Virus record (IMG/VR): IMGVR_UViG_3300005529_000001
Location: 124,001 to 188,000 of that record
Reading direction: 5' to 3' (one strand)
Length of the DNA: 64,000 nucleotides
Under the pieces are notes generated by a model. That model made no database searches and was not told the origin of the DNA. It worked only from the letters and a program-made list of their open reading frames with translations. Position 1 is the stretch's first letter. Each line of letters begins with the position of its first letter. This document shows positions 3,009 to 64,000 of the stretch, piece after piece. Made by a program: the position numbers and the translations under genes.

Positions 3009-3188
3009 TCAGTAGGGCATGCACTGTGGTCGGGTGTCAACACCCGGGAAGCGGCAGACGTAACCGGAAGGACAATCAGCCGGGCTGCTGCACGCCTTCG
3101 CACCAGGTGCCAGGGGCTTGACGTTCGTGGTCGAGAAACATGCCGTTAGGATGACTGCGGTCACCAACGCGGTGAGGAATTTCTTCAT
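3009..3188 (-). CDS. small Cys-rich lipoprotein (59 aa)
   Basis: Own translation MKKFLTALVTAVILTAC (lipobox) ...CSSPADCPSGYVC; not in track. Confidence 0.65.
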   Translation of the reverse strand: MKKFLTALVTAVILTACFSTTNVKPLAPGAKACSSPADCPSGYVCRFPGVDTRPQCMPY

Positions 3189-3358
3189 GTCGAGTAACTA
3201 TCGACCTCATGGTCTCGGTGGAGAAACCAAAAGACCGCACAGAACATCGAGATGAGGACTATGGCACCGGGGACGTTTTGTTGTCCGATCAGGCCATGAC
3301 AGCACATGCCGACAACAACGGCGATGACCCACAACGAGTAGGCTGCGGTTTTTGCCAT
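3185..3358 (-). CDS. small membrane protein (57 aa)
   Basis: Own translation MAKTAAYSLWVIAVVVG...; TAATGT 6 nt upstream; ATGA overlap with 3188. Confidence 0.55.
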   Translation of the reverse strand: MAKTAAYSLWVIAVVVGMCCHGLIGQQNVPGAIVLISMFCAVFWFLHRDHEVDSYST

Positions 3359-3364
3359 GATCGT

Positions 3365-3394
3365 ACATTATCAAGCACGATCACATCGTTTCAC
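3365..3394 (-). promoter_or_regulatory. putative promoter GTGAAA-N18-TAATGT, leaderless
   Basis: -10-like hexamer 6 nt before ATG 3358. Confidence 0.55.
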
Positions 3395-3664
3395 TCAGCG
3401 ACGCCAGGTGACTCGACCCTTGGTCAAATCGTAGGGAGAGACTTCGATGGTGACATTGTCACCGGGTAACAGACGGATGCGATTGATCCGCAGCTTGCCC
3501 GACAACGTGCACACGACCGTGTTGCCCGCCTCACACTTCACCCTGAAGAGCGTTCCCGGTAGGGCTTCCTCAACCCGTCCTTGAAGTTCCAGTCGGTCCT
3601 GCCGTTCCTCCGGCTCGGTCTGAAACTCTTGCTCCTGCCTGCCCCTTCTCTTGTTCTTGCTCAT
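3395..3664 (-). CDS. infA: translation initiation factor IF-1
   Basis: S1/OB signature G.V.EALPG..FRV....G..V.C.LSGK.R.N.IR.LPGD.V.IEVSPYDLTKGR.TWR. Confidence 0.92.
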   Translation of the reverse strand: MSKNKRRGRQEQEFQTEPEERQDRLELQGRVEEALPGTLFRVKCEAGNTVVCTLSGKLRINRIRLLPGDNVTIEVSPYDLTKGRVTWRR

Positions 3665-3860
3665 TGTCCTCGTCTTCGTTGTCAGCCGGACCACCAAGGC
3701 CCGGTGGTGGGCTCATCAAGCTGTTGCTACGTTCAAGGCTGGAGCCACCGCTCCCGCCCCCGTCCATGAAAAAACCAGCGCTGTACCTGAGGTCATCATC
3801 AACGCCAAACTCCAACAGCTGGCGGATCTTTGCTCGTAGCTCGTGCAACCTGATTCTCAT
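3570..3860 (-). CDS. hypothetical protein with N-terminal leader
   Basis: MRIRLHELRAKIRQLLEF; overlaps infA 5' end by 95 nt. Confidence 0.45.
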   Translation of the reverse strand: MRIRLHELRAKIRQLLEFGVDDDLRYSAGFFMDGGGSGGSSLERSNSLMSPPPGLGGPADNEDEDNEQEQEKGQAGARVSDRAGGTAGPTGTSRTG

Positions 3861-3864
3861 CCAT

Positions 3865-4263
3865 TTACGTATCTTGTTCGGACAGCTTCTGGGTCTCATG
3901 ACCAAAGAACAACAATGACCGTGAGTGTTCAAGGGCCCAACCCACGCCTATCTCACATGATCGCATCGTCGCGTAACATTTGATCGTTCGCCCGTGGTTT
4001 TCAGGGGCGACAAGAGCGTAGAAATCAATGCACTCGCTCGATTGCGTTTCAACATTGATTTCTCGAAGATCGCCGACACCTGTGATGAAAACGATGTCAC
4101 CGTTCGGGTGCCGCCCCGCCGCCACCACAATCCTCGCCCTGTCTGGATCAACACGCACCAGTTCCAATTCTTTCGTGGGCAACAGCTTCATGTAAGCGGG
4201 CACTTCAACGGTGACTGGCCCCTTGACGTGAATGTCAGAGTTGGGTGCGATCGTCAACTCCAT
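3865..4263 (-). CDS. hypothetical protein
   Basis: Globular-looking 132 aa ORF divergent from glf. Confidence 0.6.
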   Translation of the reverse strand: MELTIAPNSDIHVKGPVTVEVPAYMKLLPTKELELVRVDPDRARIVVAAGRHPNGDIVFITGVGDLREINVETQSSECIDFYALVAPENHGRTIKCYATMRSCEIGVGWALEHSRSLLFFGHETQKLSEQDT

Positions 4264-4316
4264 TTCAGAACAAGGTACAACGTCTGGGGATAAGGTACAT
4301 GCCTAGGTACCTACAG

Positions 4317-5423
4317 ATGCTCCCGTATGACTATCTGATCGTAGGTGCAGGTCTGTTCGGATCGACTTTCGCGTGGCACGCTAGACAACGTGGCAAGCGT
4401 GTCTTGGTCATAGACAAACGAAACCACGTGGGCGGGAACTGCTACACCCACCAGGTTGAAGGGATCCACGTCCATGCTTATGGCCCGCACATCTTCCACA
4501 CGAGCGATCAACAGGTCTGGTCATTCGTCAACAGGTTCGCTAGCTTTCACAAGTACGTGCACCGGGTCAAGGCTCGGCACGGTGACAAGCTGCTATCTTT
4601 GCCCGTCAACCTGATGACGTTCAACAAGCTATGGGACGTAAAGACGCCAGAAGAAGCCGAGGCAAGGCTCCAACAAGCCAGGACAGTTTGCCCGCATCCC
4701 AAGAACATGGAAGAGTGGGCCCTGTCGCAGGTCGGACCCGAGATCTACGAATTGCTCTTCAAACACTACACCACCAAACAATGGGGCCGAGACCCAAACC
4801 AGATGCCCGCCGCTGTGTTGAAGCGTCTGCCGATCAGGCTCACCTGGGATGACAACTACTATGATGACAAGTGGCAAGGGATCCCAACTGGCGGCTACAC
4901 CCGGATATTTGACGGGCTGTTAGAGGGCTGCGATGTCCGTCTGGGAATCGACTATCTGGCACACCGTGAAGAGCTTGACAAGCTAGCACGGGTTGTGGTG
5001 TACACAGGCCAAGTAGATGCGTATTACGATTACGCGTTGGGCAGGTTAGAATACCGCACGCTTGACTTTGAAACAAAGGTAATCCCCCACAGCAACTACC
5101 AAGGTTGCGCACAGCTGAACTGGACGGGCCCAGAAGTTCCCTGGACTCGGACAATCGAACACAAGCATTTCGAACTCACCGATGTGCCTGCTACCGTTGT
5201 CACGTGGGAGACACCTGCAGCGTACAAACCGGGTGATGAGCCCTACTACCCGATCAACGATACTAGGAACAACGATCTCTACATGAGGTATAAAGACCTA
5301 GCCGATCACGAACCCGGGGTCTTGTTTGGCGGACGGCTGGGAACCTATCGCTATTTTGACATGCACCAGGTGATTGCACAAGCAATGCACCTGGCGAAAC
5401 AAGAAGGGTTGATTGATGTCTGA
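4317..5423 (+). CDS. glf: UDP-galactopyranose mutase
   Basis: YDYLIVGAGLFG, GGNCY, YGPHIFHT, YTTKQWG, GRLGTYRYFDM; alternative start 4299. Confidence 0.95.
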   Translation: MLPYDYLIVGAGLFGSTFAWHARQRGKRVLVIDKRNHVGGNCYTHQVEGIHVHAYGPHIFHTSDQQVWSFVNRFASFHKYVHRVKARHGDKLLSLPVNLMTFNKLWDVKTPEEAEARLQQARTVCPHPKNMEEWALSQVGPEIYELLFKHYTTKQWGRDPNQMPAAVLKRLPIRLTWDDNYYDDKWQGIPTGGYTRIFDGLLEGCDVRLGIDYLAHREELDKLARVVVYTGQVDAYYDYALGRLEYRTLDFETKVIPHSNYQGCAQLNWTGPEVPWTRTIEHKHFELTDVPATVVTWETPAAYKPGDEPYYPINDTRNNDLYMRYKDLADHEPGVLFGGRLGTYRYFDMHQVIAQAMHLAKQEGLIDV

Positions 5424-6117
5424 CGTTCTTGCTTCTTTCTTGCTGCCATCTCGTGGACGAATCGATCGTTTGGTCCAGAGCATGCAATCAGTTCACCGTC
5501 GCAACGGCAACGTCTCACGTTGGGGTGAGATTCCCAACTATGAGTTCCTGATCCGTGCCGATGACGATGATGTCGCAACAGTCAACGTGCTTAAGAAGCA
5601 CTACGTTGGTGATCCGTACACTCGGGTCACGTTTGGTCCACGTGGACGTGGTTACCTGGACCTGCACTTGATGGTCAACGAGCTCGCCGCGCAAGCACGG
5701 GGTGAGTTCTTGGTCCTCTGGAACGACGATGCATTCATGGTCACTCCAGACTGGGATGACGTGCTGTTAAAGCACCTCAATGATCCACCCCTGATTTACC
5801 ATCCGACTTCTGCGGGCACCACTCGTAACATCTTTCCGATCGTCCGCCGTAGCATCTACCAAGCCATGGGCCGGTTTAGCGAGAGCGCCCTTAACGATTT
5901 TTACGTCTGGACGCTTGCAAAAAGGCTTGGTATCAACACGCAGATCAACATTGATGTCCGCCATGACCATCCGCAAGTTGGTGGGACAACGATCGATCAG
6001 ACGTACGTCGATGCAATGAAAGCGTGCACCGTTGTCAAAAATGACGACAAAGACCCACGGATCTTAGCGTGCTTGGACGAAGACGAAGCAAAGATCCGAG
6101 CGCTTCTCAGTAAGTGA
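5413..6117 (+). CDS. GT-A (GT2-like) glycosyltransferase
   Basis: LLPSRGR, IRADDDD, ARGEFLVLWNDD; overlaps glf stop. Confidence 0.75.
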   Translation: MMSDVLASFLLPSRGRIDRLVQSMQSVHRRNGNVSRWGEIPNYEFLIRADDDDVATVNVLKKHYVGDPYTRVTFGPRGRGYLDLHLMVNELAAQARGEFLVLWNDDAFMVTPDWDDVLLKHLNDPPLIYHPTSAGTTRNIFPIVRRSIYQAMGRFSESALNDFYVWTLAKRLGINTQINIDVRHDHPQVGGTTIDQTYVDAMKACTVVKNDDKDPRILACLDEDEAKIRALLSK

Positions 6118-6886
6118 GAAGTTGTCGCCAGTGTTCAGGCATGAGCTGAACCTCGCCCACCGCATATGGATCCCCGAATTGGTTTGACTGTTTATCGATA
6201 TTAGCGAACACATCAATAACAGACTGACGATCAGCGATGTTTAACCGGGCTGAATGACGACGGAAATACTCGTCAACATCGAGACACCAACCGTGAAGTA
6301 ACGACAGTGTTGGGTCAATTGGCTCATTGACTTGTTTGATACCATTCAAGTAAAAGTTATGGAAGCCCCTCTGGTACGTCATTGGCACTTTTGTCACCAG
6401 TGTCTTGTCATACATGGGTAGCCTCCACATCGACCGTCTGTCAACAAGGAGTTGAGCGCCTGGCGTCCGTGACAGCATCGCTTCACCCGGTTGTTGTACC
6501 ACATTCCACCCAACTGCACGTCTCCACTGGTCTTTTGACTTCAGGAAACGCTCACAATAGTCTCGCAAGTTAACGTACTTGGCATTGGGGATCAGGAACT
6601 CGTCGGTCTCGGCAAAGACAACGACGGGGTAGCGTTGGAGCAACTCACGTTGCATTTGCTCAACAACCTGTTTCAAAAACAGACTGACGTGAGTTCCACG
6701 TGACGGCACACACACAAAATTGACCCGAGGGTGAAGCAATCGTGCTTCTTCCACGCTCCCATCATCAGTTGAGTTATCGATCACATAGACGTCTTCAGGC
6801 GGAAAATTGCTGGTGTAGTAATTCAGCCACGTCCGGAGAAACAACGGCTCGTTTCGTGTGATGGTAAAAGCAGCGAAGTCTCCCAT
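6107..6886 (-). CDS. GT-A glycosyltransferase (Glyco_tranf_2_4/GT92-like)
   Basis: ITRNE..FL..WLNYY, VIDNSTDDGS, FAETDEFL. Confidence 0.75.
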   Translation of the reverse strand: MGDFAAFTITRNEPLFLRTWLNYYTSNFPPEDVYVIDNSTDDGSVEEARLLHPRVNFVCVPSRGTHVSLFLKQVVEQMQRELLQRYPVVVFAETDEFLIPNAKYVNLRDYCERFLKSKDQWRRAVGWNVVQQPGEAMLSRTPGAQLLVDRRSMWRLPMYDKTLVTKVPMTYQRGFHNFYLNGIKQVNEPIDPTLSLLHGWCLDVDEYFRRHSARLNIADRQSVIDVFANIDKQSNQFGDPYAVGEVQLMPEHWRQLLTY

Positions 6887-6923
6887 GTGTAGATTCTACT
6901 CTTCCATGATTTAAAGTGTTGCT

Positions 6924-7268
6924 ATGTGGACTGACCGCCCCCGGATGTGGACTGATGGGCTTGTCATGGCGACCCTAGTGGGTCTCCTCCTGATCATGAT
7001 AGTTAGCATCGGGTTTGAAACTAGTTCAGTTCCCATTTCAATCCCACAGTGCCAGGAAGTCGTCGTGACAATTCACCAAGGTGAGGAAACACTGGCAACA
7101 TGCCCCGCAGGGACATGGCTGGATATCATGGATGACAATGTCGTTTGCAGGTGCTCTCCCCAAGACCGTCACCAGCCCGTACCCAAGTTCATCACCCCTC
7201 CCTCGACCACACAAATACCGAAGGCAACTCCCCCGCAAAGAGACGACAAGGGCGGGATCGAGATCTGA
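6924..7268 (+). CDS. membrane-anchored/secreted protein
   Basis: N-terminal TM helix, Cys residues, Pro/Thr tail; TAAAGT 6 nt upstream. Confidence 0.55.
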   Translation: MWTDRPRMWTDGLVMATLVGLLLIMIVSIGFETSSVPISIPQCQEVVVTIHQGEETLATCPAGTWLDIMDDNVVCRCSPQDRHQPVPKFITPPSTTQIPKATPPQRDDKGGIEI

Positions 7269-7275
7269 TGCTTAG

Positions 7276-7518
7276 ATGCTGCTCATACTCACGGCACTGC
7301 TCACGTTCGTTTTGATTGTGGTCTTGTCGCGAGTTGGCATGCTTCACAAACGTGAAGCACAGGACTCACCTTTCATCGCTGACATTGCACACGGAATTTG
7401 CCCGCGGTGCGGGGCCCTACGCCCGGCTGTCAAATTGCCAGATCCCCCAAGCTTTTGGAAGAGCTTTAGCTGCACGTGTGGGTTCACGGTGAAGGCTCAC
7501 CTACGAGATCGAACGTAA
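7276..7518 (+). CDS. membrane-anchored zinc-ribbon protein
   Basis: N-terminal TM helix; CPRC...CTCG. Confidence 0.55.
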   Translation: MLLILTALLTFVLIVVLSRVGMLHKREAQDSPFIADIAHGICPRCGALRPAVKLPDPPSFWKSFSCTCGFTVKAHLRDRT

Positions 7519-7577
7519 CTCTAACGGTGAAACGACGTGCAACCATGGTGTAGGTTGTGATCAAGAGGTTACACACC

Positions 7578-8243: not shown

Positions 8244-8464
8244 CAACAGCAGAATCCTGGGTCAAGCGCCTAGCCCCCGGTACGTTGCTCTATAACAAGA
8301 ACCACCAGGGGTTCTACCTGGTGGTTCATGCGTCTGCACGTGACTTCCCAGAGAAGTGGCTGGAGCTGTCGATATTGCTCGTCACGCCACAGTGCACATT
8401 GAAGAGACTCCAGGTAGAATCTGGCATCTTCACTGGCAACTGGGTGATCGTCGATGTCAGCTGA
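8240..8464 (+). CDS. small KOW/SH3-like protein
   Basis: LAPGTLLY...FYLVV. Confidence 0.55.
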   Translation: MTTAESWVKRLAPGTLLYNKNHQGFYLVVHASARDFPEKWLELSILLVTPQCTLKRLQVESGIFTGNWVIVDVS

Positions 8465-11548: not shown

Positions 11549-11554
11549 GCCCAG

Positions 11555-11772: not shown

Positions 11773-12059
11773 GCCTCGTATTCCTTGGTGACCTTGACGT
11801 AAACGGGTTGGCCCTTGCGCCACGCTACAGCGATGTTTCCCTTCAGGTAATCATCGATCATCGCCATCAAGACCAGCTTCTGTTGCGGGTCATTGGCTTT
11901 GTTAGCGTAGCGGAGCAGCTTGCGTTCCGTGAAGTCGACGACATTACGAAACGAAGACCCGCCGTGTAACTGAAATTCAGTGCAGCGTTCCTTCCTCTCG
12001 GGTAGGTTGGCAGCGTTGCGTGTAGCCATTGCTGGTCTAAGTAGGCCGTCAGCGCTCAT
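11769..12059 (-). CDS. hypothetical protein (start 12059 or 12029)
   Basis: GGAG before ATG 12059; TACTTA 8 nt before ATG 12029. Confidence 0.6.
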   Translation of the reverse strand: MSADGLLRPAMATRNAANLPERKERCTEFQLHGGSSFRNVVDFTERKLLRYANKANDPQQKLVLMAMIDDYLKGNIAVAWRKGQPVYVKVTKEYEA

Positions 12060-12347
12060 GTCATCACTCCGGGTTCAAATGACAACACGCCGGCTTTCCC
12101 GGCGCGTGTCAAGGAATCATGAGCGTTGGTCAACGTTAGGCTAGGTGATGATGTCTCCGAGCGATCCATGACATTACCATTGTAACTCTAAGTAGGGGTG
12201 ACCACCATCACTTTCTTTTTTCTTTGAGTTGCTTCTTGAGCTGTTCTTTGACGCTCTTCTGAGCTTTTTTCATCGCTCGTTTGAGGCTTCCCGCTTTTTT
12301 GATGTCATCCCACTTGAGAAGATCAGCAACGGTAGTATATTGTGTGT

Positions 12348-26247: not shown

Positions 26248-26292
26248 TTACGACCTCCGGCCGTAAGTATGTCCCTCAAGAAAACGCGGGTG

Positions 26293-27065: not shown

Positions 27066-27382
27066 CAGTCTTCACCCTCACTCAACCTCGTGTCGAGCAA
27101 GTTGTACATCGTCTGTCTCGCGGCGTGTTTGTCGCCCCGGAAACGGCTGACAAGCATGGGCCACTTCCGAGCCACATAACGGTGGACGCGCAGCTTGTGA
27201 TGGTGAGACCGTTCACCCATTTCTTCTAGCCACTCATCAGCGATGTGATGTGCTTCCTTGTCGGAAGGTTCGTCAGGAGAGTCTTGAAAGCCAGTCCCGT
27301 GTAGGACAGACATCATCCTGGGATCGATGCGTAGCTCCGCCAACGTGGCGTGAATGAACTGGCGCAGCAAGCTTGACATCAC
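27065..27382 (-). CDS. hypothetical protein with N-terminal leader
   Basis: MMSSLLRQFIHATLAEL. Confidence 0.6.
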   Translation of the reverse strand: MMSSLLRQFIHATLAELRIDPRMMSVLHGTGFQDSPDEPSDKEAHHIADEWLEEMGERSHHHKLRVHRYVARKWPMLVSRFRGDKHAARQTMYNLLDTRLSEGED

Positions 27383-28635
27383 GTCCTCGGTTTCAACAAC
27401 ATCTTAACCAACCAGGTGATGGCATCGATGAAGCTCTGGAAGCCCGACTTGGCTGGCCCATGGACGGGGACAGGAGTGACTGGCGCGGGCAGAGGGGTGG
27501 GCATTGGCCCGGGTTGCACGGGCGGTGGAGGGGGCGGCGTGGGGGCCGGCTGGTCCTGCACGAGGACGGGGATGCCGAGCTTGTCTGGGTCCCACCACTC
27601 TTGCATGGGCCTGCCAAGGGACGTCAGGACGTTCCCGGTACCCTCCGTGATCGCGTTGTTGGCGCGGCCACCTCCGCCATGGTCAGCGATGCCGTTTGCA
27701 TCGACATCGCTGAGACACCACTCAACGTGGTCGTTATTGGTTCCCGGCGTGTTGTAACGCATCAGAGCGCCACGCTTTGGCATTGTCTTTCCATCAAACT
27801 TGACAAGAGCGCCCGTGTTGATGCCGATCTGTCGGACCCATGACACCGCCATGCCCGACACGTACTTCTTGTTCAGGATCGGGTCACGGACACCCGCCTC
27901 AGCCATGATGCCCAAAGCGGACGTTGCACAGTTGGTGGAGACGGTGACGACCGCGTTTGGGTCATCGACGCCACGTGCCACAAGCTTGCCCAGCTCATCA
28001 CGCCGCGTGCTGAGGTTGCAACCGACGTGCGACTTCACCAGCCTGACGATCCGGTCAGCTGGGCTCTCGTTCGCGAGCAACGGTTGCTGGTTGACGGGAA
28101 CGTTGCTGCTCGAGGGATCAGGATGGGTTGGTGGCGCTGGTGGAGGGGGAGGATCGATGGGAGCTGGGTGAACCAACGGCTGGCCATCGGGGGTCAAGAA
28201 CAGCTGACGTTCGCGGACTCGCCGGTTGTAGAGGCCCTTGTCTTGAGTCAGCTTGCCGTTGATGACAGCGTGGCACCAGAGGAGCATCGCGTCAGCTGCG
28301 CCCGCAACATCGCCAGCATTTAGCTTGGTTCGCATCGACGAACCGGCCAACGAACCTGTGCCGCAGTTGAAGGTGAACGACACCAGGGCATCAAACATGT
28401 TCTGGGTCAAGCCGGAGTACGTGATGTCCTTGTTGACAGCACCTTCCGCAGTGCTCACGTCACCGGCTAGGATCTGCAACGCTTGGTCATGGGTGATGCC
28501 GTTTGGGAACGACTCACCAGGCCGCACAACGTGCCCGATCCCGATCGTTGGGATCCCAGCAATGTCCTTGTAAACGTGATCGACTTCCCCTTCTTCGCGT
28601 GCGATGAAGTTAAGTCCATTCTGGGACGTTTTCAT
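27379..28635 (-). CDS. endolysin: GH24 lysozyme plus putative CHAP/NlpC-like domain
   Basis: IAREEG...YKD.AG..TIGIGH, FDALVSFTFN.G, GL..RR..E..LF; second domain NCATS...NDHVE; Pro linkers. Confidence 0.88.
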   Translation of the reverse strand: MKTSQNGLNFIAREEGEVDHVYKDIAGIPTIGIGHVVRPGESFPNGITHDQALQILAGDVSTAEGAVNKDITYSGLTQNMFDALVSFTFNCGTGSLAGSSMRTKLNAGDVAGAADAMLLWCHAVINGKLTQDKGLYNRRVRERQLFLTPDGQPLVHPAPIDPPPPPAPPTHPDPSSSNVPVNQQPLLANESPADRIVRLVKSHVGCNLSTRRDELGKLVARGVDDPNAVVTVSTNCATSALGIMAEAGVRDPILNKKYVSGMAVSWVRQIGINTGALVKFDGKTMPKRGALMRYNTPGTNNDHVEWCLSDVDANGIADHGGGGRANNAITEGTGNVLTSLGRPMQEWWDPDKLGIPVLVQDQPAPTPPPPPPVQPGPMPTPLPAPVTPVPVHGPAKSGFQSFIDAITWLVKMLLKPRT

Positions 28636-28640: not shown

Positions 28641-28646
28641 TAAATA
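28641..28646 (-). promoter_or_regulatory. putative late-type promoter element TATTTA
   Basis: 5 nt before endolysin ATG; recurring TA[CGT]TTA class. Confidence 0.5.
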
Positions 28647-28961: not shown

Positions 28962-28969
28962 GCCAGTAA

Positions 28970-29485
28970 CTAGGCTTTCACCCGTGCGACTGCTTCATCA
29001 AACCAACGGCTGACAGTCTTGGGAAAGGGCCACATGTAACCGTAAGCGCTCGAGACGAACTGCTTCAAGTACCAAGCTCGACGCTTGTCATCATTGTAAT
29101 CGATCCCGTAATCTGCAAAAGCTTGGAGAGACTCTGCATACGCTTGCTGTTCCAGCTTGGCTCGGCAATAGGACAGGCCCACCGGGAAAAGGATGAGCAA
29201 GTAAAGAAGGGCATACACGGGGTACGTCAACGTGCGTGATTGCCGCATGTGAACGCGCTCGTGACGCAGGATCGAGCACCTATCGTCATCGCCGAACGTC
29301 TCCCAGCCATCAGGCACGTACACCGTGTGATAGATCGTCGTCACGTAGCTAGTCATGAATTGCTGGCCCAGGACGAGTCCAACCAGCTTCATGAACCAGC
29401 TATCGTTCTTTTTAGCGATGTTGAAAGAGGGGAACTCTGTTTTTATCTCGGCGCACAGACCTTGATAATCAGGTGTGATTGTCAT
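28970..29485 (-). CDS. HExxH zincin-like protein (DUF4157-like)
   Basis: ILRHERVH...LEQQAY. Confidence 0.65.
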   Translation of the reverse strand: MTITPDYQGLCAEIKTEFPSFNIAKKNDSWFMKLVGLVLGQQFMTSYVTTIYHTVYVPDGWETFGDDDRCSILRHERVHMRQSRTLTYPVYALLYLLILFPVGLSYCRAKLEQQAYAESLQAFADYGIDYNDDKRRAWYLKQFVSSAYGYMWPFPKTVSRWFDEAVARVKA

Positions 29486-36391: not shown

Positions 36392-36406
36392 TCTCGTAAG
36401 TATCGA

Positions 36407-39210: not shown

Positions 39211-39216
39211 TAAATA
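39211..39216 (-). promoter_or_regulatory. putative late-type promoter element TATTTA
   Basis: 6 nt before ATG 39204. Confidence 0.5.
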
Positions 39217-45057: not shown

Positions 45058-45089
45058 GATCTTCTCCTGTGATAACTAGGAGGTTCGAG

Positions 45090-49111: not shown

Positions 49112-49112
49112 T

Positions 49113-49469: not shown

Positions 49470-49529
49470 GGTTACCTCTGATGGGCACTATACCACAGCC
49501 CACCGCAGGTAAGTAGGATGCCCGGGACG

Positions 49530-51845: not shown

Positions 51846-52600
51846 GAGCCCCTCTTCTGTCCCTGGCCCATCACCTGTGCCAGCTCCTCAGCCTTCTTGA
51901 AACGTTCTTCGATGACATCGAAGTTAAGCTCTTTCATCATCGCAACCAGGTATGACTCCTTGTCGGTCTGGTAATCTTTGAAGTACGAGTGCTCGTGCAT
52001 GTCAATGACGACCAACGGGTAGAACCCGAGCATCACGTCTTGTGAGTTGTTGCTGACCATCGTGTTGATGTAGCGTTGGAGGTACATGTGATAGCCGCAG
52101 ACAGCCCATCCCTGCCCGCTGCCCATCGCGCAAGCCATGAAGTCTTTCTGCCAGTCGTTGAATGTTCCAAAGTCACGTTCTAACCTCAGGTACGTCATCG
52201 AGTCCATGTAGACTTCGCTGTGAGGATCGAAGCAGTTGGCAAAGTACAGCTCGTGAAGCCACACTGCATTGAGGTTGTATGTCTCATCCAGCTTCAGGCT
52301 ACGGTAATCGCTGTGCTTGCTGTCGGCTTGCGCTCGTTCTGCGGTGTCGAGCTCGCTGCTGACGCGGTTCAGCGTCTCGATGTGGCCCTTGTAAAGAGCC
52401 TCGTGAGCGTCCTTCGTCTTCTGTGACGCAAACTCGGTCACCTGACTGTACTGCTTGGGTTGCGCGACGTACGCCTCGTCAAGCGGTTCGGGTCCCGGGA
52501 TCTGCTTCTTCAGCGACTCTTTGATGATGCCAGCGAGGTCAACACCCTCTGCAAGACCCAGCAAGCCGTCACCTGTCTTTCCGTTCGAGCTCATGGCCAT
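51842..52600 (-). CDS. Fe/Mn superoxide dismutase-like protein with N-terminal leader
   Basis: HEALYKGH, LHELYFAN, GQGWA, PLVVIDMHEHSY..DY. Confidence 0.82.
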   Translation of the reverse strand: MAMSSNGKTGDGLLGLAEGVDLAGIIKESLKKQIPGPEPLDEAYVAQPKQYSQVTEFASQKTKDAHEALYKGHIETLNRVSSELDTAERAQADSKHSDYRSLKLDETYNLNAVWLHELYFANCFDPHSEVYMDSMTYLRLERDFGTFNDWQKDFMACAMGSGQGWAVCGYHMYLQRYINTMVSNNSQDVMLGFYPLVVIDMHEHSYFKDYQTDKESYLVAMMKELNFDVIEERFKKAEELAQVMGQGQKRGS

Positions 52601-52627
52601 ACTTATCAGGTGGGTCGGGCGCAGGAC

Positions 52628-54117: not shown

Positions 54118-54125
54118 GACAGTAA

Positions 54126-54689
54126 CTATCGCCGGGCCAGAGCTTGGTAGATGGCTTCCTGCAGGGTCAACACCTCGACCCCAGCGCTTTTCAGGAGATC
54201 GATCCCATCAGTGATCCGATACGGGATCTCATAGACGACTCTGGCAATCTCCGCGTTGACGATCAGCTTCGCACACTCCTTGCACGGGCTGTTCGTCACG
54301 TACATGTGCTTCGGTCTGGCAAAGTTGTAGTCGCACTTGACGAGAGCGTTGACCTCAGCGTGGACAGTGCCGCTCTTCCCGCGTTCGAGCGATTCAACGT
54401 GATTGGGACCGCCCTTCCACATCCCGTTGTACCCTACGCTGAGCATCTGCGTGTTGTTCGACGAAACGACGATCGCTCCCACTTTCAATGCCGGGTCGAT
54501 CGAGCGCAAAGCGATTGTCTTTGCGACCTGCATCCAGACTGACGGCCAGGTCGGACGTTCGGGTTCCTTGTCCTCAACGAGAACAGTCAAGCAGAACTTG
54601 CACGTCTGCCCACCGGCATCATTCTCCACCCAATGATGGAAGATGTCTTTGGTGTTTGCTAGACACGCTTCGTTTAGGTTTCCCATCAA
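54126..54689 (-). CDS. dCMP deaminase
   Basis: VGAIVV, SVGYNG, HAEVNAL, SPCKECAKLI. Confidence 0.92.
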   Translation of the reverse strand: MMGNLNEACLANTKDIFHHWVENDAGGQTCKFCLTVLVEDKEPERPTWPSVWMQVAKTIALRSIDPALKVGAIVVSSNNTQMLSVGYNGMWKGGPNHVESLERGKSGTVHAEVNALVKCDYNFARPKHMYVTNSPCKECAKLIVNAEIARVVYEIPYRITDGIDLLKSAGVEVLTLQEAIYQALARR

Positions 54690-55861: not shown

Positions 55862-55867
55862 GCGGTC

Positions 55868-57029: not shown

Positions 57030-57033
57030 GGAC

Positions 57034-57782: not shown

Positions 57783-57785
57783 TAG

Positions 57786-59503: not shown

Positions 59504-59509
59504 GAGCGG

Positions 59510-59515
59510 ATCATA
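59510..59515 (-). promoter_or_regulatory. -10-like TATGAT heading the epimerase-hydroxymethylase operon
   Basis: 6 nt before ATG 59503. Confidence 0.55.
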
Positions 59516-59536
59516 ACCCGCCCGCCGTCCAAAGTT

Positions 59537-60058
59537 TCAGTACCGCGTGGTGTCGACCCAAGCACCGTCGGCAGGAACCCACTGCCACGGTGGCATGTCT
59601 TCCTCTTCGCTTGGTTCACCCTCGGTTGCCATCAGAGCCCAAGGAACACCATCAACAACAATCGATGGGTCATTTTCGTCGACCGCTTCAAGGACGTAAA
59701 AGTACGTGAGATCAGCAGGAGCATCAGCAAGAGCAACAACGGCTTCAGGCACCATCTTTTCTAGCTCTTGAAGGGTGAATGCCTGCATGTGATGCAAGCC
59801 CTCAGACAACACCTTCATGGCATCGTTGACGTAATAGTCGAGGATGTCGGCTTCGACCTTGTTGGATCCTGCTTCCTGGACTGCGCTGCTCCAGCTCGTG
59901 AAGGTAGTGTCCCACCCATCACTGTCATCTGTGAACCGGCGACCGATCTTAGCCTCGACAAGACGTCGAAACTTCCGATGATCATCAATGATCATTTCTT
60001 CATTCAGTGCGCGTTCGATCTCCTCACGCACCAGGGCCCTTAGCGACTTCTCATCCAT
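59537..60058 (-). CDS. acidic protein with N-terminal leader
   Basis: MDEKSLRALVREEIERALNEE; TACTTA 6 nt upstream. Confidence 0.65.
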   Translation of the reverse strand: MDEKSLRALVREEIERALNEEMIIDDHRKFRRLVEAKIGRRFTDDSDGWDTTFTSWSSAVQEAGSNKVEADILDYYVNDAMKVLSEGLHHMQAFTLQELEKMVPEAVVALADAPADLTYFYVLEAVDENDPSIVVDGVPWALMATEGEPSEEEDMPPWQWVPADGAWVDTTRY

Positions 60059-60059
60059 G

Positions 60060-61424
60060 TCAGGTAAGTAGGCCCATCCTGCGCATGGCGGCGGGAGTTG
60101 TTGCCTCGTAGGAGCACCGCTTCCTGATGACTTCCAACAGCTTCTGGTTGATGTTGTGACGGGCATTCTCCCGTGATGGACACTGAACACGCCCAATCGA
60201 CCTGTCAAGCAAATCAACCAAATTGATGAGATTTACTTCACCCAGCACGTATTGGCTCACCCCAGCCTCCTCAGCCAGGCTCGAATACTCGTAGTTGTCG
60301 AGCCACAGTGGCATGCATCCCAACTCGACGCATTCTCGAGCAGCTGTCCCGCCATACGGATCCTTGTTATAGAGGCCCAGAGCGATGTGGGAGTTCCGTG
60401 CCACGTACTTGTACTCGTCACGGTTGAAAGTGTCATCCGTCAGCTTGACGTAGCCGTTGGCCCCACATTTCTCTTCGAGCTCAGCGTTAGAGAACTTGAA
60501 ATTTGGATTGCCACACACTACGACGTAGTCCCGTCGCCGTTGTCGCAGCTGGGGAAGGATATCGAACATGAACTTCATACCGTTGGTATAGTCGCCGCTC
60601 GACGGAGAGATCCGATTGGGGAAGAACAGGACGCACTTTCCCTCCGTCTTGGCTTTCCATTCCGCCGCAGAAAAACGGACGTTCTTCATGTCAGGTTCCA
60701 GCAACGTCTCCGCCGAGGAGTACCCGTCGTCCCAGGGCATTGACTTGGCACGAACGTCATCAACCACGTCCTGGGTGAACCACTTGCCCATGCTGTCAAA
60801 GAACTGCAACATCGCTGACTCGCACTGCCAGAAGTTGTAGTCGGCCCGGAGTGCGGCTTCACACTGGCCAAGCCACAGTGAACACTCTTGCGGGAACTTG
60901 GGGACTTCAGGCACATCTACAAAGTGGGAGTGGACGTAGAACTTGGGTTGGTAACCACCGTTGATGTGAAACATCGCCTTGAAGTTACGAAGGTGCATCG
61001 GATCATTGATGTAGACCGCGTCGTACTTCAACTCTGGGTGCTTTTTGTGATTGTGGATCCCGATGCTCAGGGAGACCTTGTTGAAGTTGAGATCGTACCT
61101 GGTCGCCAGCGCGTTTGCCATTACTTCGTGCTGGATATAGTTGAGCCGGCCCCGGTCTTCTTTGGTCGGATCGACATAACCATAGAGGCAATGCCAGTCA
61201 AGATCCGGGTTGACGATCCACGGATAATCAACGCACTGGCTAGCGTTTTCATAGTAGGTATCGAACAGCTTCGGTCCCATCACGTCGATCTGGAGATCTG
61301 GGTTGCGGCGCAACATCTCTCGCACCCGCCCCATCACCATCTGCCACCCGCTGTCGCAAGCCAGGTCAAACTTGTTGTGTTTGTAGTTGATGTTACTCAG
61401 CTGAGTCTGGACTAGCAGGCGCAT
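60060..61424 (-). CDS. GT-B-fold glycosyltransferase (candidate DNA glycosyltransferase)
   Basis: Two-domain size; FFPNRIS..DYTNG, YGG.AARE.VELGC.PL; start MRLLVQ after GGAAAGG. Confidence 0.7.
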   Translation of the reverse strand: MRLLVQTQLSNINYKHNKFDLACDSGWQMVMGRVREMLRRNPDLQIDVMGPKLFDTYYENASQCVDYPWIVNPDLDWHCLYGYVDPTKEDRGRLNYIQHEVMANALATRYDLNFNKVSLSIGIHNHKKHPELKYDAVYINDPMHLRNFKAMFHINGGYQPKFYVHSHFVDVPEVPKFPQECSLWLGQCEAALRADYNFWQCESAMLQFFDSMGKWFTQDVVDDVRAKSMPWDDGYSSAETLLEPDMKNVRFSAAEWKAKTEGKCVLFFPNRISPSSGDYTNGMKFMFDILPQLRQRRRDYVVVCGNPNFKFSNAELEEKCGANGYVKLTDDTFNRDEYKYVARNSHIALGLYNKDPYGGTAARECVELGCMPLWLDNYEYSSLAEEAGVSQYVLGEVNLINLVDLLDRSIGRVQCPSRENARHNINQKLLEVIRKRCSYEATTPAAMRRMGLLT

Positions 61425-61761
61425 GCTTGAACCTTTCCCTGATGTCGGCGTGGTGTTCATCGCAGTGTGCACGTGCCTGCTCAAAAAGCGCAACTAGGAT
61501 GCGACGCAGTTTCCTGTTGTCGTCGAAAGTCAGGTCTTCAATGATTTCCCTGGCGCAGTGCTCAGCCCACTTCTCCTTGTTGAACGTGACCTCACCGTAC
61601 TGATCATCGATCACCCATGACCCGGGCGCTGCGGCTTTTGACCTGAACTTGGTCTTGAAGGTGATGTGACCGCTCGACCAATCCTCGAAGCCAGGAACGC
61701 ACTCCTTTCGAGCGTCGAGCATGTGGAACTCGACGCCCATGATGAAAGCGCTCTTGCTCAT
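61393..61761 (-). CDS. hypothetical protein
   Basis: ATGA overlap with exonuclease stop. Confidence 0.55.
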   Translation of the reverse strand: MSKSAFIMGVEFHMLDARKECVPGFEDWSSGHITFKTKFRSKAAAPGSWVIDDQYGEVTFNKEKWAEHCAREIIEDLTFDDNRKLRRILVALFEQARAHCDEHHADIRERFKHAPASPDSAE

Positions 61762-62321
61762 GTCGTGCTTCGCTTCAGGTTCTGTCTCAGCCACTCGGTA
61801 CACTCCTTACCATGTGCGATGCTCTCGAGAACGTCGTCTTGGGCACGGTGCGCTTGGGCTTTCTTGAGCTGCGGCATTCCCATCGACCGGCAGTACAGTT
61901 TCAGCACCGAGACGTCATAGCACCTGACATCGTTCTCACGGAACTCGAACCGCGTTGCTACCCTAGGCATGTGGACTTTCATGAACTTGTAATCAAAACG
62001 GATGCTAGATCCTCCCATGACGGGTCGTTCGTCTGGGTCACCAACAAGCGGGACAACACGAAGGAGGTCTTCCTCAACGTCCCGTACCTGTTTCGCAAGC
62101 CACGACGAACAGTCAGCAAGCAGACCGTTCTTGGTGTGCATCTCCAAGACGATCGGTCTCAGATCAGATGGAATCCACGGGGCCAACGGCATCACTGCAT
62201 GGTACACGGGCCTGGCGTTGAAGGGGTCGTTGAAGTCCGCGACGGACACCGCGAGCTCCAACGGCTTGTCTTTGTCAGGATCGATGCCCGTTGACTCAAA
62301 GTCAAGCCAGAAGATCTTCAT
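61758..62321 (-). CDS. DEDDh 3'-5' exonuclease (oligoribonuclease-like)
   Basis: WLDFESTG, EMH.KNGL, GSSI.FD..F, DVS, HRA.DD..ES. Confidence 0.9.
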   Translation of the reverse strand: MKIFWLDFESTGIDPDKDKPLELAVSVADFNDPFNARPVYHAVMPLAPWIPSDLRPIVLEMHTKNGLLADCSSWLAKQVRDVEEDLLRVVPLVGDPDERPVMGGSSIRFDYKFMKVHMPRVATRFEFRENDVRCYDVSVLKLYCRSMGMPQLKKAQAHRAQDDVLESIAHGKECTEWLRQNLKRSTT

Positions 62322-62602
62322 GCGTTTCTCAGCGCAGCTGTCAGCAAACCGATCAATGGTCGCAACGTTTGTCCCGTACGCGCTGCCTCTTTCCCACCGC
62401 GACTGAGCAGCGCATCTAAGGATAACGCCATTGCTCGAGCTTCATCGTGGTCGAGCTCAATGGTGACTGTCTTCGCCAACCGCTTGGGATCAGTCTTAGC
62501 GTTCTCCCAGATGCCCAAGCAAGTGGGACACCCATCGGGATACTTCGCTGTCTTCATCGGCATCCGACGTGCCTGGTACTTCGGGTGTTCTTTGCACTTC
62601 AT
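62318..62602 (-). CDS. hypothetical protein
   Basis: C..H...C..C; operon-coupled. Confidence 0.55.
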   Translation of the reverse strand: MKCKEHPKYQARRMPMKTAKYPDGCPTCLGIWENAKTDPKRLAKTVTIELDHDEARAMALSLDALLSRGGKEAARTGQTLRPLIGLLTAALRNA

Positions 62603-63153
62603 CAGACCACCCTGTAGATGAAATAATGAACGTCATCGAGCTCACGTTGGAGGTTCTCATCGTCAACGTTGAGCTTCAGGAGCTTGCATTTGGTCCATGA
62701 CGCAAAGTCCATGTACGCATCATGGATCTGCTGGAGCGTCTCCCCCTTGACGGTTGGGTCAAGATCATCAACGATCTTTGAGTAATCTGTACGGCAAGCA
62801 AGGATGATGCGAGCGTCGAGCTTGGCCCACTCTTCGTCGAGATGCCTCAGCATCCTGTCGTCAGTCACCCGGCCGAACGTCTTGCTGTAAGCATACTCGC
62901 ATGGGTAACCACGATCGAAGATGACAGACTGGCCTGTTTGTTTGAGCAGGTCCATAACCCGGGGGTCAGCATACCGCAGCTGTTCTAGGAACAGCTCACG
63001 TTTCGAGACCCGGCTTGACAAGAAAGCATCGTGCTCGCTCGACGCCTTGAAGTAAGGGATGTCGGTGACCCTGGAGAGGGCCTTGCTTATCTCTGTTTTC
63101 CCAGACATGTCGGGCCCAACGAAGAAAACGATGCGTTGCCGTCCCACGTACAT
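62602..63153 (-). CDS. P-loop nucleoside-monophosphate kinase (thymidylate/dNMP kinase-like)
   Basis: GPDMSGKT, FDR..P.EY.Y. Confidence 0.8.
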   Translation of the reverse strand: MYVGRQRIVFFVGPDMSGKTEISKALSRVTDIPYFKASSEHDAFLSSRVSKRELFLEQLRYADPRVMDLLKQTGQSVIFDRGYPCEYAYSKTFGRVTDDRMLRHLDEEWAKLDARIILACRTDYSKIVDDLDPTVKGETLQQIHDAYMDFASWTKCKLLKLNVDDENLQRELDDVHYFIYRVV

Positions 63154-63159
63154 GGCTCT

Positions 63160-63165
63160 ATCCTA
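63160..63165 (-). promoter_or_regulatory. -10-like TAGGAT heading the kinase-exonuclease-GT operon
   Basis: 6 nt before ATG 63153. Confidence 0.55.
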
Positions 63166-63186
63166 ACCTACCGCCCTGCAAATCGA

Positions 63187-63192
63187 TACTTA
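63187..63192 (+). promoter_or_regulatory. putative late-type element TACTTA
   Basis: 7 nt before ATG 63200. Confidence 0.5.
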
Positions 63193-63199
63193 GAGAGTC

Positions 63200-64000
63200 A
63201 TGAGGGTCAGTCTGGGCGTCCTGAGGGACTACGTCTCCAACCTGTTGGTTGAGAATCGCATCGATGATGCACGTGAAAAATACCCCGACATCGAAGAGGA
63301 TGTCTTCCAAAACCTCGTCGCGAACCAACCCGGCGGGTCGAACAACAAGTACCTGATGTGGTCAGCCAAGCAGGTTGACGACGAGGTAATGCCTGAAGAG
63401 GTCATCATGGCCATCAGGTTGTTTCACGACAACGTTCACCGTCTCAAGCAAAAGGACATCAACCAGTACGAGAGCGTCGAAGCCCTCGACACCGCCATTG
63501 ACGAGCTCCAGAAGAACAAGAGCAAGAGCCAAGAAGCCAAGCAAGCGAAGGCTGACACCCAGGTCATCTACAACGACGACAACTGGCTCGTTGTCCGCCC
63601 GTACACTGCTGACGCATCATGCAAGTACGGCGCAGGTTCAAAGTGGTGCATCTCGGCCACTGCATCTCGCAACTACTTCAACTCGTACTCAGAGACCAAC
63701 AACAAGTTCTACTTTGTCATCGACAAGAAATCAACTAGCAACACGCCCAACTCAAAGTTCGCTATCGCTATCGTTGCAGCGGGCTTGGCTGCCGCCGGTC
63801 GCGAGATCCAGGTCTACAACGCCTCCGATAGCTTGGTGTCTCTGAACACCGTAGCTAGCGCCGTCGGTAGCAAGTGGCCTGAAATCTGGGAAAAGATCCA
63901 AGCTCACGTCGCAGCAAACCCGAAGACCCGTGAGGTCGAAGACGCTGAGAGAGCGACTGAAGAGCATGTTGCTGCGTTGTTGAAAGGCGAGAAGCTTAGC
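63200..64000 (+). CDS. PcfJ-like domain protein with N-terminal leader, partial
   Basis: Own translation MRVSLGVLRDYVSNLLVEN...KDINQY...WLVVRP.T..ASCKYG.GSKWCIS; open to window end; not in track. Confidence 0.75.
   Translation, partial: MRVSLGVLRDYVSNLLVENRIDDAREKYPDIEEDVFQNLVANQPGGSNNKYLMWSAKQVDDEVMPEEVIMAIRLFHDNVHRLKQKDINQYESVEALDTAIDELQKNKSKSQEAKQAKADTQVIYNDDNWLVVRPYTADASCKYGAGSKWCISATASRNYFNSYSETNNKFYFVIDKKSTSNTPNSKFAIAIVAAGLAAAGREIQVYNASDSLVSLNTVASAVGSKWPEIWEKIQAHVAANPKTREVEDAERATEEHVAALLKGEKLS

What the first reader, a model, noticed from the sequence alone, without database searches (positions are those of the whole stretch)
3188..63200. Second promoter-like class TA[CGT]TTA marks leader-bearing and lysis genes
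Seen on the coding strand 5-8 nt before starts 3188, 12029, 28635 (endolysin), 28961, 36391, 39204, 54117, 60058 and 63200, and further upstream of 26247, 45057, 52628 and 49469. Seven sites sit directly before leader-bearing genes, and three more leader genes lie in operons headed by one. TATTTA is the reverse complement of the core of the T4 late promoter TATAAATA. Inference: a phage-specific late promoter without a -35 element, co-regulating virion cargo and lysis. Caveats: two sites include the upstream TAG stop, one lies inside coding sequence, and leader gene 2769 uses the other promoter class.
Basis: partly seen in the sequence, partly recalled or inferred. Interest (0 to 1): 0.62.

Follow-up and report, generated by a model that had tools for sequence, protein, structure and literature searches.

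The report
Phage late promoter abutting start codons
A rare six-base word, TA(C/G/T)TTA, sits at a fixed few bases before the capsid, tail, lysis and head-cargo genes of an uncultivated 369-kb phage and its relatives, and is most likely a T4-style late promoter with a new sequence, placed so that many messages begin at the start codon.

Summary
The window is part of a 369,475-bp IMG/VR phage genome (GC 56%). TA[CGT]TTA occurs only 91 times on both strands. 41 copies lie within 30 nt upstream of a gene start on the coding strand, against 1 of 91 for the reverse complement and 1-6% for single-mismatch variants.

The extended consensus is S-M-TA-B-TTA, with no -35 signal. Spacing to the start is bimodal. 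One peak is at 5-6 nt with no Shine-Dalgarno and only ATG or GTG starts. The other is at 14-22 nt, with the Shine-Dalgarno beginning 6-8 nt after the motif.

The motif heads the major capsid protein, both tail-sheath genes, a baseplate gene, the endolysin, about 12 genes with a conserved N-terminal leader, and two tRNA genes. Motif and spacing are conserved in relatives while flanks drift. No phage RNA polymerase was detected, but a conserved gp55-like sigma factor was.

Best reading: a single-element, T4-geometry late promoter of a new sequence, giving leaderless or Shine-Dalgarno-first mRNAs. There is no transcript evidence, because no RNA run was listed.

The parts
3195..3200 (-). TAGTTA, 6 nt before ATG 3188. 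The gene encodes a 59-aa protein with a lipoprotein-like signal peptide.
12038..12043 (-). TACTTA, 8 nt before ATG 12029 (86-aa protein, no family match).
12189..12194 (-). TACTTA, intergenic and co-oriented with its neighbours, with only a 37-aa ORF downstream. This is an orphan or spare copy.
26264..26269 (-). TACTTA, 16 nt before ATG 26247. A GGAGG Shine-Dalgarno begins at nt 6 after the motif.
28641..28646 (-). TATTTA, 5 nt before the endolysin ATG 28635. Four relatives keep the motif (as TACTTA) and the 5-nt spacing.
27379..28635 (-). Endolysin gene (418 aa) with an N-terminal Phage_lysozyme domain.
28967..28972 (-). TAGTTA, 5 nt before ATG 28961 (100-aa leader-like protein). Its TAG is the stop codon of the upstream gene. 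Motif and spacing are conserved in relatives L110 and L111.
36397..36402 (-). TACTTA, 5 nt before ATG 36391. The protein begins MRTTVGRLRQ, a leader peptide.
39211..39216 (-). TATTTA, 6 nt before ATG 39204 (362-aa protein, no family match).
45073..45078 (-). TAGTTA, 15 nt before ATG 45057. A GGAG Shine-Dalgarno begins at nt 6 after the motif.
49510..49515 (-). TACTTA, 40 nt before ATG 49469. A class-1 TGGTATAGT element lies between them. This site heads the gene string that contains leader genes 46842 and 46445.
52600..52605 (+). TACTTA, 4 nt before GTG 52610 or 22 nt before ATG 52628. Which start is used is uncertain.
54123..54128 (-). TAGTTA, 5 nt before GTG 54117. Its TAG is the stop codon of the upstream gene.
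60065..60070 (-). TACTTA, 6 nt before ATG 60058. It lies inside the last codons of the upstream gene (60060-61424).
63187..63192 (+). TACTTA, 7 nt before ATG 63200. The gene encodes a 1037-aa protein that begins MRVSLGVLRDYV, a leader peptide.
2776..2784 (-). Class-1 comparator: TGGTAGGAT extended -10 element exactly 6 nt before ATG 2769, a leader gene that begins MKTTLGKIRLALREA.

Best explanation
TA[CGT]TTA, in its extended form (C/G)(A/C)TA(C/G/T)TTA, is most likely the only sequence element of a phage-specific promoter class. It has no -35 element and sits where a -10 element would.

The class drives the structural genes (major capsid protein, two tail sheaths, baseplate), the endolysin, and a family of proteins that share an N-terminal leader of the form M-R/K-x-R-L-G-x-L-R-x-x-I-x-E-A. 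These leader proteins are probably head cargo trimmed by the phage's T4 gp21-type prohead protease.

The proposed mechanism is inferred, not shown. Host core RNA polymerase is re-targeted by a phage sigma factor. The best candidate is the conserved gp55-like protein at genome 340740-341660, outside the window. It would read the element at -11 to -6 (the 8-mer at -13 to -6, as in T4), and transcription would start at the sixth base after the final A.

Where the spacer is 5-6 nt, the mRNA would begin at the A or G of the ATG or GTG, so it is leaderless. Where the spacer is 14-22 nt, the mRNA would begin at or next to the Shine-Dalgarno.

Shown here: position, orientation, stringency, absence of a -35 signal, conservation across relatives, the identity of downstream genes, and the presence of a sigma-like protein. 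Inferred: that the element initiates transcription, where the start site lies, that expression is late, and which sigma factor reads it.
For: 1. Stringent, oriented enrichment. 41 of 91 copies lie within 30 nt upstream of starts in the sense orientation, against 1 of 91 for the reverse complement. Every single-base variant is at background. The motif came out of an unsupervised hexamer scan.

2. No -35 signal. Information content upstream of -2 is near zero. The other promoter class in the same genome shows a clear GTGAAA -35 element plus a TGG-extended -10.

3. Geometry fits a start site at nt 6.
- Class-2 spacing to RTG starts peaks at 5 nt (11 sites at 5, 6 at 6). Class-1 TAnnnT ends exactly 6 nt before 77 of 553 starts. 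The one-base offset is what is expected for a T4-type box at -13 to -6 against a sigma70 hexamer at -12 to -7 (PMC2988020).
- At the longer-spaced sites, Shine-Dalgarno tetramers begin 6-8 nt after the motif.
- Credible closely spaced starts are all ATG or GTG. That is the requirement for leaderless translation in mycobacteria (PMC4633059).

4. The motif sits 7 and 8 nt upstream of two tRNA-Gly genes. This argues for a transcription signal and against a translation signal.

5. Conservation.
- In 14 relatives (GC 46-63%), 48 of 63 copies precede ORF starts, at orthologous positions before the capsid gene and its neighbours.
- Four endolysin orthologues keep the motif plus exactly 5 nt plus ATG, while the middle base, spacer and flanks change.
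- In 66 more distant loci, TANTTA is still 9-12 times enriched upstream of genes.

6. Downstream genes include the gp23-type capsid protein, two sheath genes, a baseplate wedge gene and the endolysin.

7. No multisubunit or T7-type RNA polymerase was detected. A phrog_234 'late sigma' match was found (E 3e-6 and 6e-5). Its AlphaFold model aligns to T4 gp55 (7d7c_F, Z 10.6 over 119 residues), and all top 50 structural matches are sigma factors. The protein has 1759 homologues at 67-92% identity.
Against: - There is no transcript evidence of any kind. No RNA run was listed.
- The link from sigma factor to motif is circumstantial. The phrog_234 score is only 24-25 bits. Foldseek E-values were no better than 0.07. 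Profile comparison with T4 gp55 alone found nothing. Z values near 10 are not decisive for helical proteins.
- No gp45-type clamp was found, so a T4-style activation mechanism is unsupported.
- The candidate sigma has a C-terminal sigma4-like part, yet there is no -35 signal.
- 19 copies lie antisense inside genes and a few are orphans.
- The motif pattern was not seen around the capsid gene of LR756508, which has a 27%-identical sigma homologue.
- My gene starts come from a home-made gene caller.
Confidence: 0.7

Rival explanations
1. The element is a promoter of this kind, but it is read by a different factor. Candidates are the phage's 271-aa sigma70-family protein (genome 33359-34174) or an alternative host sigma factor.
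For: That protein has strong Sigma70_r2 (78.6 bits) and r3 matches. The gp55-family evidence for the other candidate is weak. Both sigma genes lie in gene strings headed by class-1 promoters.
Against: A sigma factor with region 3 fits the TG-extended class-1 promoters better. The motif is invariant across relatives whose GC spans 46-63%, which likely have different hosts. That argues for a phage-borne reader over a host sigma. The gp55-like protein is exceptionally conserved, and the single-box, no -35 architecture is the gp55 hallmark (PMC2988020).
Confidence: 0.2
2. The motif is an RNA-level endonuclease processing site. Cleavage would cut polycistronic transcripts just upstream of genes and create leaderless or short-leader mRNAs.
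For: It would explain the strand specificity, the location at gene 5' ends (including sites overlapping upstream stop codons), and the fixed distance to the ATG. Primer-extension ends at T4 'promoters' can be processing products (PMC2988020).
Against: The geometry parallels the class-1 -10 elements, offset by exactly 1 nt. The motif occurs before tRNA genes. A matching sigma factor is present. No nuclease candidate was identified.
Confidence: 0.07
3. The motif is a translation-initiation element without a Shine-Dalgarno: an A/U-rich landing pad for the ribosome or protein S1 just upstream of the start codon.
For: 25 sites lie 3-8 nt before starts that lack a Shine-Dalgarno.
Against: Single-base variants of equal A/T content are not enriched. 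28 sites lie upstream of a normal Shine-Dalgarno, which starts 6-8 nt after the motif. Two sites precede tRNA genes.
Confidence: 0.03
4. The pattern is an artefact: compositional bias of intergenic DNA, or shared ancestry of the duplicated 5' ends of the leader-gene family.
For: Intergenic DNA is richer in A and T. 12 of the closely spaced sites precede paralogous leader genes. The raw window count is only about twice the shuffle expectation.
Against: The reverse-complement control is 1 of 91. Flanks and spacers of the paralogues are unrelated while the motif is invariant. About 30 sites precede unrelated genes.
Confidence: 0.02

Closest known systems
Bacteriophage T4 late promoters (TATAAATA at -13 to -6, read by gp55 with gp33 and the gp45 clamp)
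   Same: Both are a single 8-bp box at the -10 position with no -35 conservation, and both head structural and lysis genes (PMC2988020). Read on the same strand, both have TA at box positions 3-4 and 7-8. The predicted gap from box to +1 is 5 nt, matching the P23 scaffold in PMC7892883. The phage also has a gp23-type capsid protein, a gp21-type protease and a gp55-like sigma factor.
   Different: The sequence differs at -9/-8 (AA in T4, (C/G/T)T here) and at -13/-12 (S-M here, TA in T4). In T4, -12, -9 and -8 are the bases gp55 flips into pockets (PMC7892883). TATAAATA has zero copies in this genome. No gp45 homologue was detected. The sigma candidate is 306 aa with a sigma4-like C-terminal part, against 185 aa for gp55. 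Many of the promoters abut the start codon.
Aeromonas phage Aeh1 late-promoter variant ((a/g)C at -13/-12 in place of TA)
   Same: It shows that the first two box positions vary within T4 relatives (PMC2988020). The S-M at those positions here resembles it.
   Different: As described in that review, Aeh1 differs from the T4 consensus only at those two positions. This motif also differs at -9/-8.
Leaderless mRNAs of mycobacteria (an ATG or GTG at the 5' end is necessary and sufficient)
   Same: Both lack a Shine-Dalgarno, use only RTG starts, and have a -10-type element at a fixed short distance from the start codon (PMC4633059).
   Different: The architecture here is inferred from sequence only and the host is unknown. 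It applies to two promoter classes of a phage: 77 genes of class 1 and about 25 of class 2.
Late promoters of jumbo phages phiKZ (TATG) and AR9 (AACA-N6-TA/G), read by non-virion RNA polymerases
   Same: All are short promoters without a -35 element in giant phages (PMC5312081, PMC4666361).
   Different: Those promoters are read by phage multisubunit RNA polymerases. None was detected here. The consensus differs, and AR9 5' UTRs are 26-491 nt long (PMC5312081).

Membership tests
T4-type (gp55-dependent) late promoter | A single -10-like box with no conserved -35 element | tested here: met
   Across 53 sites, information content from -50 to -3 relative to the motif is at most 0.17 bit per position. 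Class-1 sites in the same genome show a clear -35 element.
T4-type (gp55-dependent) late promoter | Box sequence TATAAATA or a near variant | tested here: not met
   TATAAATA has 0 copies on either strand. The motif is SMTABTTA, which shares 4 of 8 positions with it.
T4-type (gp55-dependent) late promoter | Box at -13 to -6 relative to a mapped transcription start | not testable with these tools
   No RNA run was listed. Indirect support: RTG starts peak 5 nt after the motif and Shine-Dalgarno sequences begin 6-8 nt after it.
T4-type (gp55-dependent) late promoter | The phage encodes a gp55-family sigma factor | tested here: inconclusive
   For: phrog_234 matches at E 3e-6 and 6e-5, 24-25 bits; VIA-align to 7d7c_F gives Z 10.6 over 119 residues, and all top 50 matches are sigma factors. 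Against: Foldseek E-values no better than 0.07, nothing from PDB sequence searches, and hhalign against T4 gp55 negative.
T4-type (gp55-dependent) late promoter | gp45 sliding-clamp activator and gp33 co-activator | tested here: not met
   gp45 was not found with the T4 protein or with phrog_223. A failure to detect it does not prove it is absent. gp33 was not searched for.
T4-type (gp55-dependent) late promoter | Drives late (virion and lysis) genes | tested here: met
   Downstream genes include a gp23-type capsid protein, two tail sheaths, a baseplate wedge protein and the endolysin. Timing of expression was not testable.
Housekeeping sigma70-type promoter (-35 element plus TAnnnT -10) | T at the last position of the -10 hexamer, and a -35 element or TG extension | tested here: not met
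   The last base is invariably A. The TA.TTT variant is at background, 8 of 145. There is no -35 signal and no TG extension.
phiKZ/AR9-type late promoter read by a non-virion RNA polymerase | A phage-encoded multisubunit RNA polymerase | tested here: not met
   PF00562 and PF00623 gave no match in the genome, although both rang in all 14 control genomes. Very divergent subunits could escape Pfam.
Leaderless mRNA | The transcript 5' end coincides with an ATG or GTG start codon | not testable with these tools
   Only the sequence prerequisites are met: no Shine-Dalgarno, RTG starts, and a fixed 5-6 nt gap from the promoter element to the start codon.

The most novel reading that the evidence does not exclude
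A globally distributed, uncultivated clade of roughly 340-370-kb T4-related phages uses a previously undescribed gp55-related sigma family. This sigma would be longer than gp55, with a sigma4-like tail, and would be specific for TA(B)TTA. Both its late promoters and its host-type early promoters are positioned so that about a hundred phage mRNAs start at the initiation codon. On this reading the capsid-targeting leader codons of the head-cargo proteins are also the 5' end of a leaderless mRNA.
Probability: 0.4. Interest if true: 0.68.

Novelty: new variant of a known kind. Interest (0 to 1): 0.55.

Why it matters
If confirmed, the finding has four uses.

- It gives a ready-made late regulon map of about 50 promoters for a very large clade of giant phages that has no cultured member. 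That clade has over 1,700 homologues of the sigma-like protein and over 599 capsid-gene contigs.
- It shows that the T4 late-transcription design (one -10-like box and a dedicated minimal sigma factor) has diversified in sequence specificity at the positions gp55 reads by base flipping. That makes the sigma-DNA recognition code testable by comparison.
- It would be an unusually clear case of a phage built around leaderless mRNAs in both the early and late classes. That constrains what the unknown host can be.
- The motif is rare enough in GC-rich relatives to be used directly for annotating gene starts and transcription units.

Tried and rejected
**Searches that found nothing**
- Megablast of 15 kb of the window against isolated phages: no match.
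- T4 gp55 and gp45 proteins searched singly in the genome: nothing.
- phrog_12791 and phrog_223 in the genome: nothing.
- PF00940 (T7-type RNA polymerase): no match, but the control genomes were also silent, so this is uninformative.
- PDB sequence searches with the sigma candidate and with its alignment: nothing.
- hhalign of the sigma alignment against the single T4 gp55 sequence: no meaningful match.
- Foldseek against PDB: only E-values of 0.07 or worse, although the matches were almost all sigma factors.

**Transcript evidence**
- No RNA sequencing run was listed for the capsid region, so read laying was not used and no start site could be checked.

**Literature**
- No paper links TACTTA-type motifs to phage promoters.
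- Nothing was found on Mel-JY01 or on immuto phage promoters.

**Other negative or uninformative results**
- The capsid region of LR756508, a 484-kb uncultured phage with a 27%-identical sigma homologue, shows no motif pattern.
- An E. coli-consensus promoter and terminator scan of 20 kb of the window was uninformative: 7 promoter-like sites against 6.3 expected.
- PHROG scans of ten small motif-headed window genes gave no function.

**Readings rejected**
- A compositional or paralogy artefact.
- The zero count of TAATTA as a meaningful signal. All AT-only hexamers with TA steps are nearly absent from this genome.

Full report
**Context**

The window is bases 124001-188000 of a 369,475-bp IMG/VR virus record with terminal repeats. 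Its GC content is 56%. It has no near relative among isolated phages.

I laid the whole genome in the Python box. I called 554 genes with a codon-usage model trained on the genome's own long ORFs. Coding density is 89%, and 439 genes are on the minus strand. Gene starts were chosen by coding score alone, not by any upstream motif.

**The observation**

The number of bases between motif and start codon is:
- 6 for start 3188, 8 for 12029, 5 for 28635, 5 for 28961, 5 for 36391, 6 for 39204, 5 for 54117, 6 for 60058 and 7 for 63200;
- 16 for 26247, 15 for 45057, 40 for 49469 and 22 for 52628.

Two TAGTTA copies use the upstream gene's TAG stop. One copy lies in the end of the upstream gene. Leader gene 2769 has a different element.

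The raw count in the window is not striking: 19 copies against 10.8 expected from shuffles. What stands out is where the copies lie.
- The whole genome holds only 91 copies on both strands.
- 41 of them lie within 30 nt upstream of a called start in the sense orientation.
- The reverse complement gives 1 of 91, and each of 15 single-mismatch families gives 1-6%.
- 54 of 91 copies lie entirely in the 11% of the genome that is intergenic.

An unsupervised scan of all hexamers in the 35 nt upstream of starts returned two families at the top. One is TACTTA, TATTTA and TAGTTA (p from 3e-23 to 1e-9). The other is TGGTAGGAT-like words.

**Anatomy of the two classes**

Aligning the sites gives (C/G)(A/C)TA(C/G/T)TTA. 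No information is present further upstream, out to -50.

The second family (class 1) is a conventional two-part promoter: a GTGAAA -35 element, then a TGG-extended TAnnnT. It is concentrated among small genes at 60-90 kb of the genome, where class 2 is absent. Class 2 is scattered through 120-310 kb, among large genes.

The spacing of both classes to start codons is informative.
- A TAnnnT hexamer ends exactly 6 nt before 77 of 553 starts, against a background of about 4 per offset.
- 38 of the 75 start-proximal TG-extended sites show that same 6-nt spacing.
- Class 2 peaks one base closer, with 11 sites at 5 nt and 6 sites at 6 nt.
- The closely spaced genes have no Shine-Dalgarno, and the credible ones begin only with ATG or GTG.
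- At the remaining class-2 sites (9-46 nt), Shine-Dalgarno tetramers begin preferentially 6-8 nt after the motif.
- Two copies lie 7 and 8 nt upstream of the mature 5' ends of tRNA-Gly genes.

All of this is what one expects if transcription begins at about the sixth base after the motif. That start point would give leaderless mRNAs, mRNAs that open with the Shine-Dalgarno, and tRNA precursors with 1-2-nt leaders.

The one-base offset between the classes matches the known difference in position between a sigma70 -10 hexamer (-12 to -7) and the T4 late box (-13 to -6, so its last six bases span -11 to -6) (PMC2988020). The T4 P23 scaffold in PMC7892883 has five bases between the box and +1 in that numbering.

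**What the motif heads**

Downstream genes include:
- a gp23-family major capsid protein (Pfam Gp23, E 5.9e-78);
- two tandem tail-sheath paralogues;
- a baseplate-wedge protein;
- the endolysin in the window.

The closely spaced sites are strongly associated with a protein family that shares an N-terminal peptide of the form M-(R/K)-x-(R/T)-L-G-x-L-(R/K)-x-x-(I/L/V)-x-E-(A/E). There are 23 such genes genome-wide, and 12 have the motif 4-7 nt upstream. Several others have looser versions of the peptide.

The peptide ends in an (I/L/V)-x-E pattern, and the phage encodes a T4 gp21-type prohead protease (Peptidase_S77, 86.6 bits). PHROG scans gave no function for the small window genes.

**Conservation in relatives**

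The capsid protein has more than 599 relatives in IMG/VR at 68-90% identity.
- In 14 of the closer ones (GC 46-63%), the motif is retained at orthologous positions before the capsid gene, the 706-aa gene upstream of it, a 93-aa gene and others.
- In those loci, 48 of 63 copies precede an ORF start, and nearly all are on the gene strand.
- In the other 66 loci, TACTTA, TATTTA, TAGTTA and TAATTA are still 9-12 times enriched upstream of ORFs.
- Four endolysin orthologues (70-81% identity) keep the motif, exactly five bases, then ATG. The middle base changes from T to C, the spacer changes, and the flanks change.

Conservation of both the motif and its spacing is the strongest argument for function.

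The nearest isolates are Microcystis phage Mel-JY01 and Flavobacterium phage immuto (both GC 35%). In them, TATTTAT lies in the 50 nt upstream of annotated starts in 9 of 14 and 8 of 11 sense-strand copies, against 3 of 10 and 4 of 10 for its reverse complement. This is suggestive only. The capsid region of LR756508 shows no such pattern.

**Who reads it**

No multisubunit RNA polymerase domains were found. The T7-type search was uninformative. Two sigma-like genes exist.

- The first is a 271-aa protein with Sigma70 regions 2 and 3.
- The second is a 306-aa protein at genome 340740-341660.
  - It matches the PHROG 'late sigma transcription factor' family that contains T4 gp55.
  - It has 1759 homologues at 67-92% identity on contigs of up to about 360 kb, none of them annotated.
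  - Its AlphaFold model has a mean pLDDT of 67, with the core at 80-90.
  - The model aligns to T4 gp55 in the late open complex (7d7c_F; Z 10.6, 119 residues, rmsd 4.4 Å). It aligns to sigma region-2 domains at Z 9-11 with rmsd 2.5-3 Å.
  - All top 50 structural matches are sigma factors.

Weaker tests of the second protein were negative.

I assign the motif to this gp55-like protein as the more likely reader. The single-box, no -35 architecture is gp55's hallmark, and a region-3-bearing sigma factor suits the TG-extended class 1 better. This assignment is not demonstrated. No gp45 clamp was detected, so I do not claim the T4 activation mechanism.

**Comparison with what is known**

The system works like T4 late transcription but fails the sequence criterion for membership. 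TATAAATA has zero copies in the genome. The box differs from T4's at -9/-8 and at -13/-12. In T4, -12, -9 and -8 are the positions gp55 flips into pockets (PMC7892883). Variation at -13/-12 is known in Aeh1 (PMC2988020).

The motif is not a sigma70 -10 hexamer, because its last base is invariably A. It is not a phiKZ or AR9 non-virion-polymerase promoter (PMC5312081).

I found no paper describing this motif. I therefore rate it a new variant of a known kind.

**Limits**

- There is no RNA evidence. Lateness, start sites and the reader protein are all inferred.
- Gene starts come from my own caller.
- The host is unknown.
- The rivals are an RNA-processing site, a translation element without a Shine-Dalgarno, and a compositional or paralogy artefact. 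All are disfavoured by the variant and reverse-complement controls, the tRNA sites, the Shine-Dalgarno-first geometry and the class-1 parallel. Only 5'-end mapping can exclude the processing reading.

Noticed in passing
window 2776-2784 (-), and genome-wide (for example upstream of window starts 31913, 34293 and 55861): The other promoter class is a two-part promoter: GTGAAA, about 14 nt, then TGGTAnnnT. Its -10 hexamer ends exactly 6 nt before the start codon at 77 of 553 genes. A large share of the phage's early-type genes therefore look leaderless too. This hints at a host in which leaderless translation is efficient.
   Followed up: partly
G000:C1 about 765-39,340 (L002-L004), outside the window: An array of about 55 tRNA genes, all on the minus strand, covers nearly all amino acids. 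It includes a tRNA with a CUA (amber-reading) anticodon at L003:18381-18456. Two tandem tRNA-like genes at L020:5439-5592 (+) were called with a 4-base 'ttca' anticodon. TAG is still used as a stop in 49 of 554 called genes, and coding density is normal under code 11.
   Followed up: partly
L002:902-975 (-) and L002:1948-2022 (-): The class-2 motif lies 7 and 8 nt upstream of the mature 5' ends of tRNA-Gly(UCC) and tRNA-Gly(GCC). Some tRNAs would therefore belong to the same regulon.
   Followed up: partly
Genome-wide; in the window at starts 2769, 36391, 46445, 46842, 51842 and 63200: 23 genes share an N-terminal peptide M-(R/K)-x-(R/T)-L-G-x-L-(R/K)-x-x-(I/L/V)-x-E-A. It resembles a capsid-targeting or propeptide signal ending at a gp21-type cleavage site. 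A T4 gp21-like prohead protease gene lies at G000:C1:275092-275535 (-).
   Followed up: partly
L015:5382-8525 (-) and L015:8638-11823 (-): Two tandem tail-sheath paralogues of 1048 and 1062 aa, each with its own class-2 motif (17 and 36 nt upstream).
   Followed up: no
L003:14962-15774 (-), genome 33359-34174: A second phage sigma factor of 271 aa with Sigma70 regions 2 and 3. It lies in a gene string headed by a class-1 promoter. Its target promoters are unknown.
   Followed up: partly
Whole genome: TAATTA is the only one of the 4096 hexamers with zero copies. It would be the A-variant of the motif and is palindromic. Its neighbours AATTAA, ATTAAT and TATATA have only 1-2 copies, so the gap is probably just general depletion. 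In AT-rich relatives TAATTA is enriched upstream of genes.
   Followed up: partly
window 3012-3188 (-): A 59-aa protein with a lipoprotein-type signal peptide (…LTAC…) and a very weak match to Cor superinfection-exclusion proteins (E 0.008). It has a class-2 motif 6 nt before its ATG.
   Followed up: no
L026-L105, P0002-P0120: The phage belongs to a very large uncultivated clade. It has over 599 capsid-gene contigs and 1759 homologues of the sigma-like protein, on contigs of up to about 360 kb, with GC from about 35% to 63%. Some members are binned in public data as Dependentiae or Paceibacterota MAGs, which is probably mis-binning.
   Followed up: no
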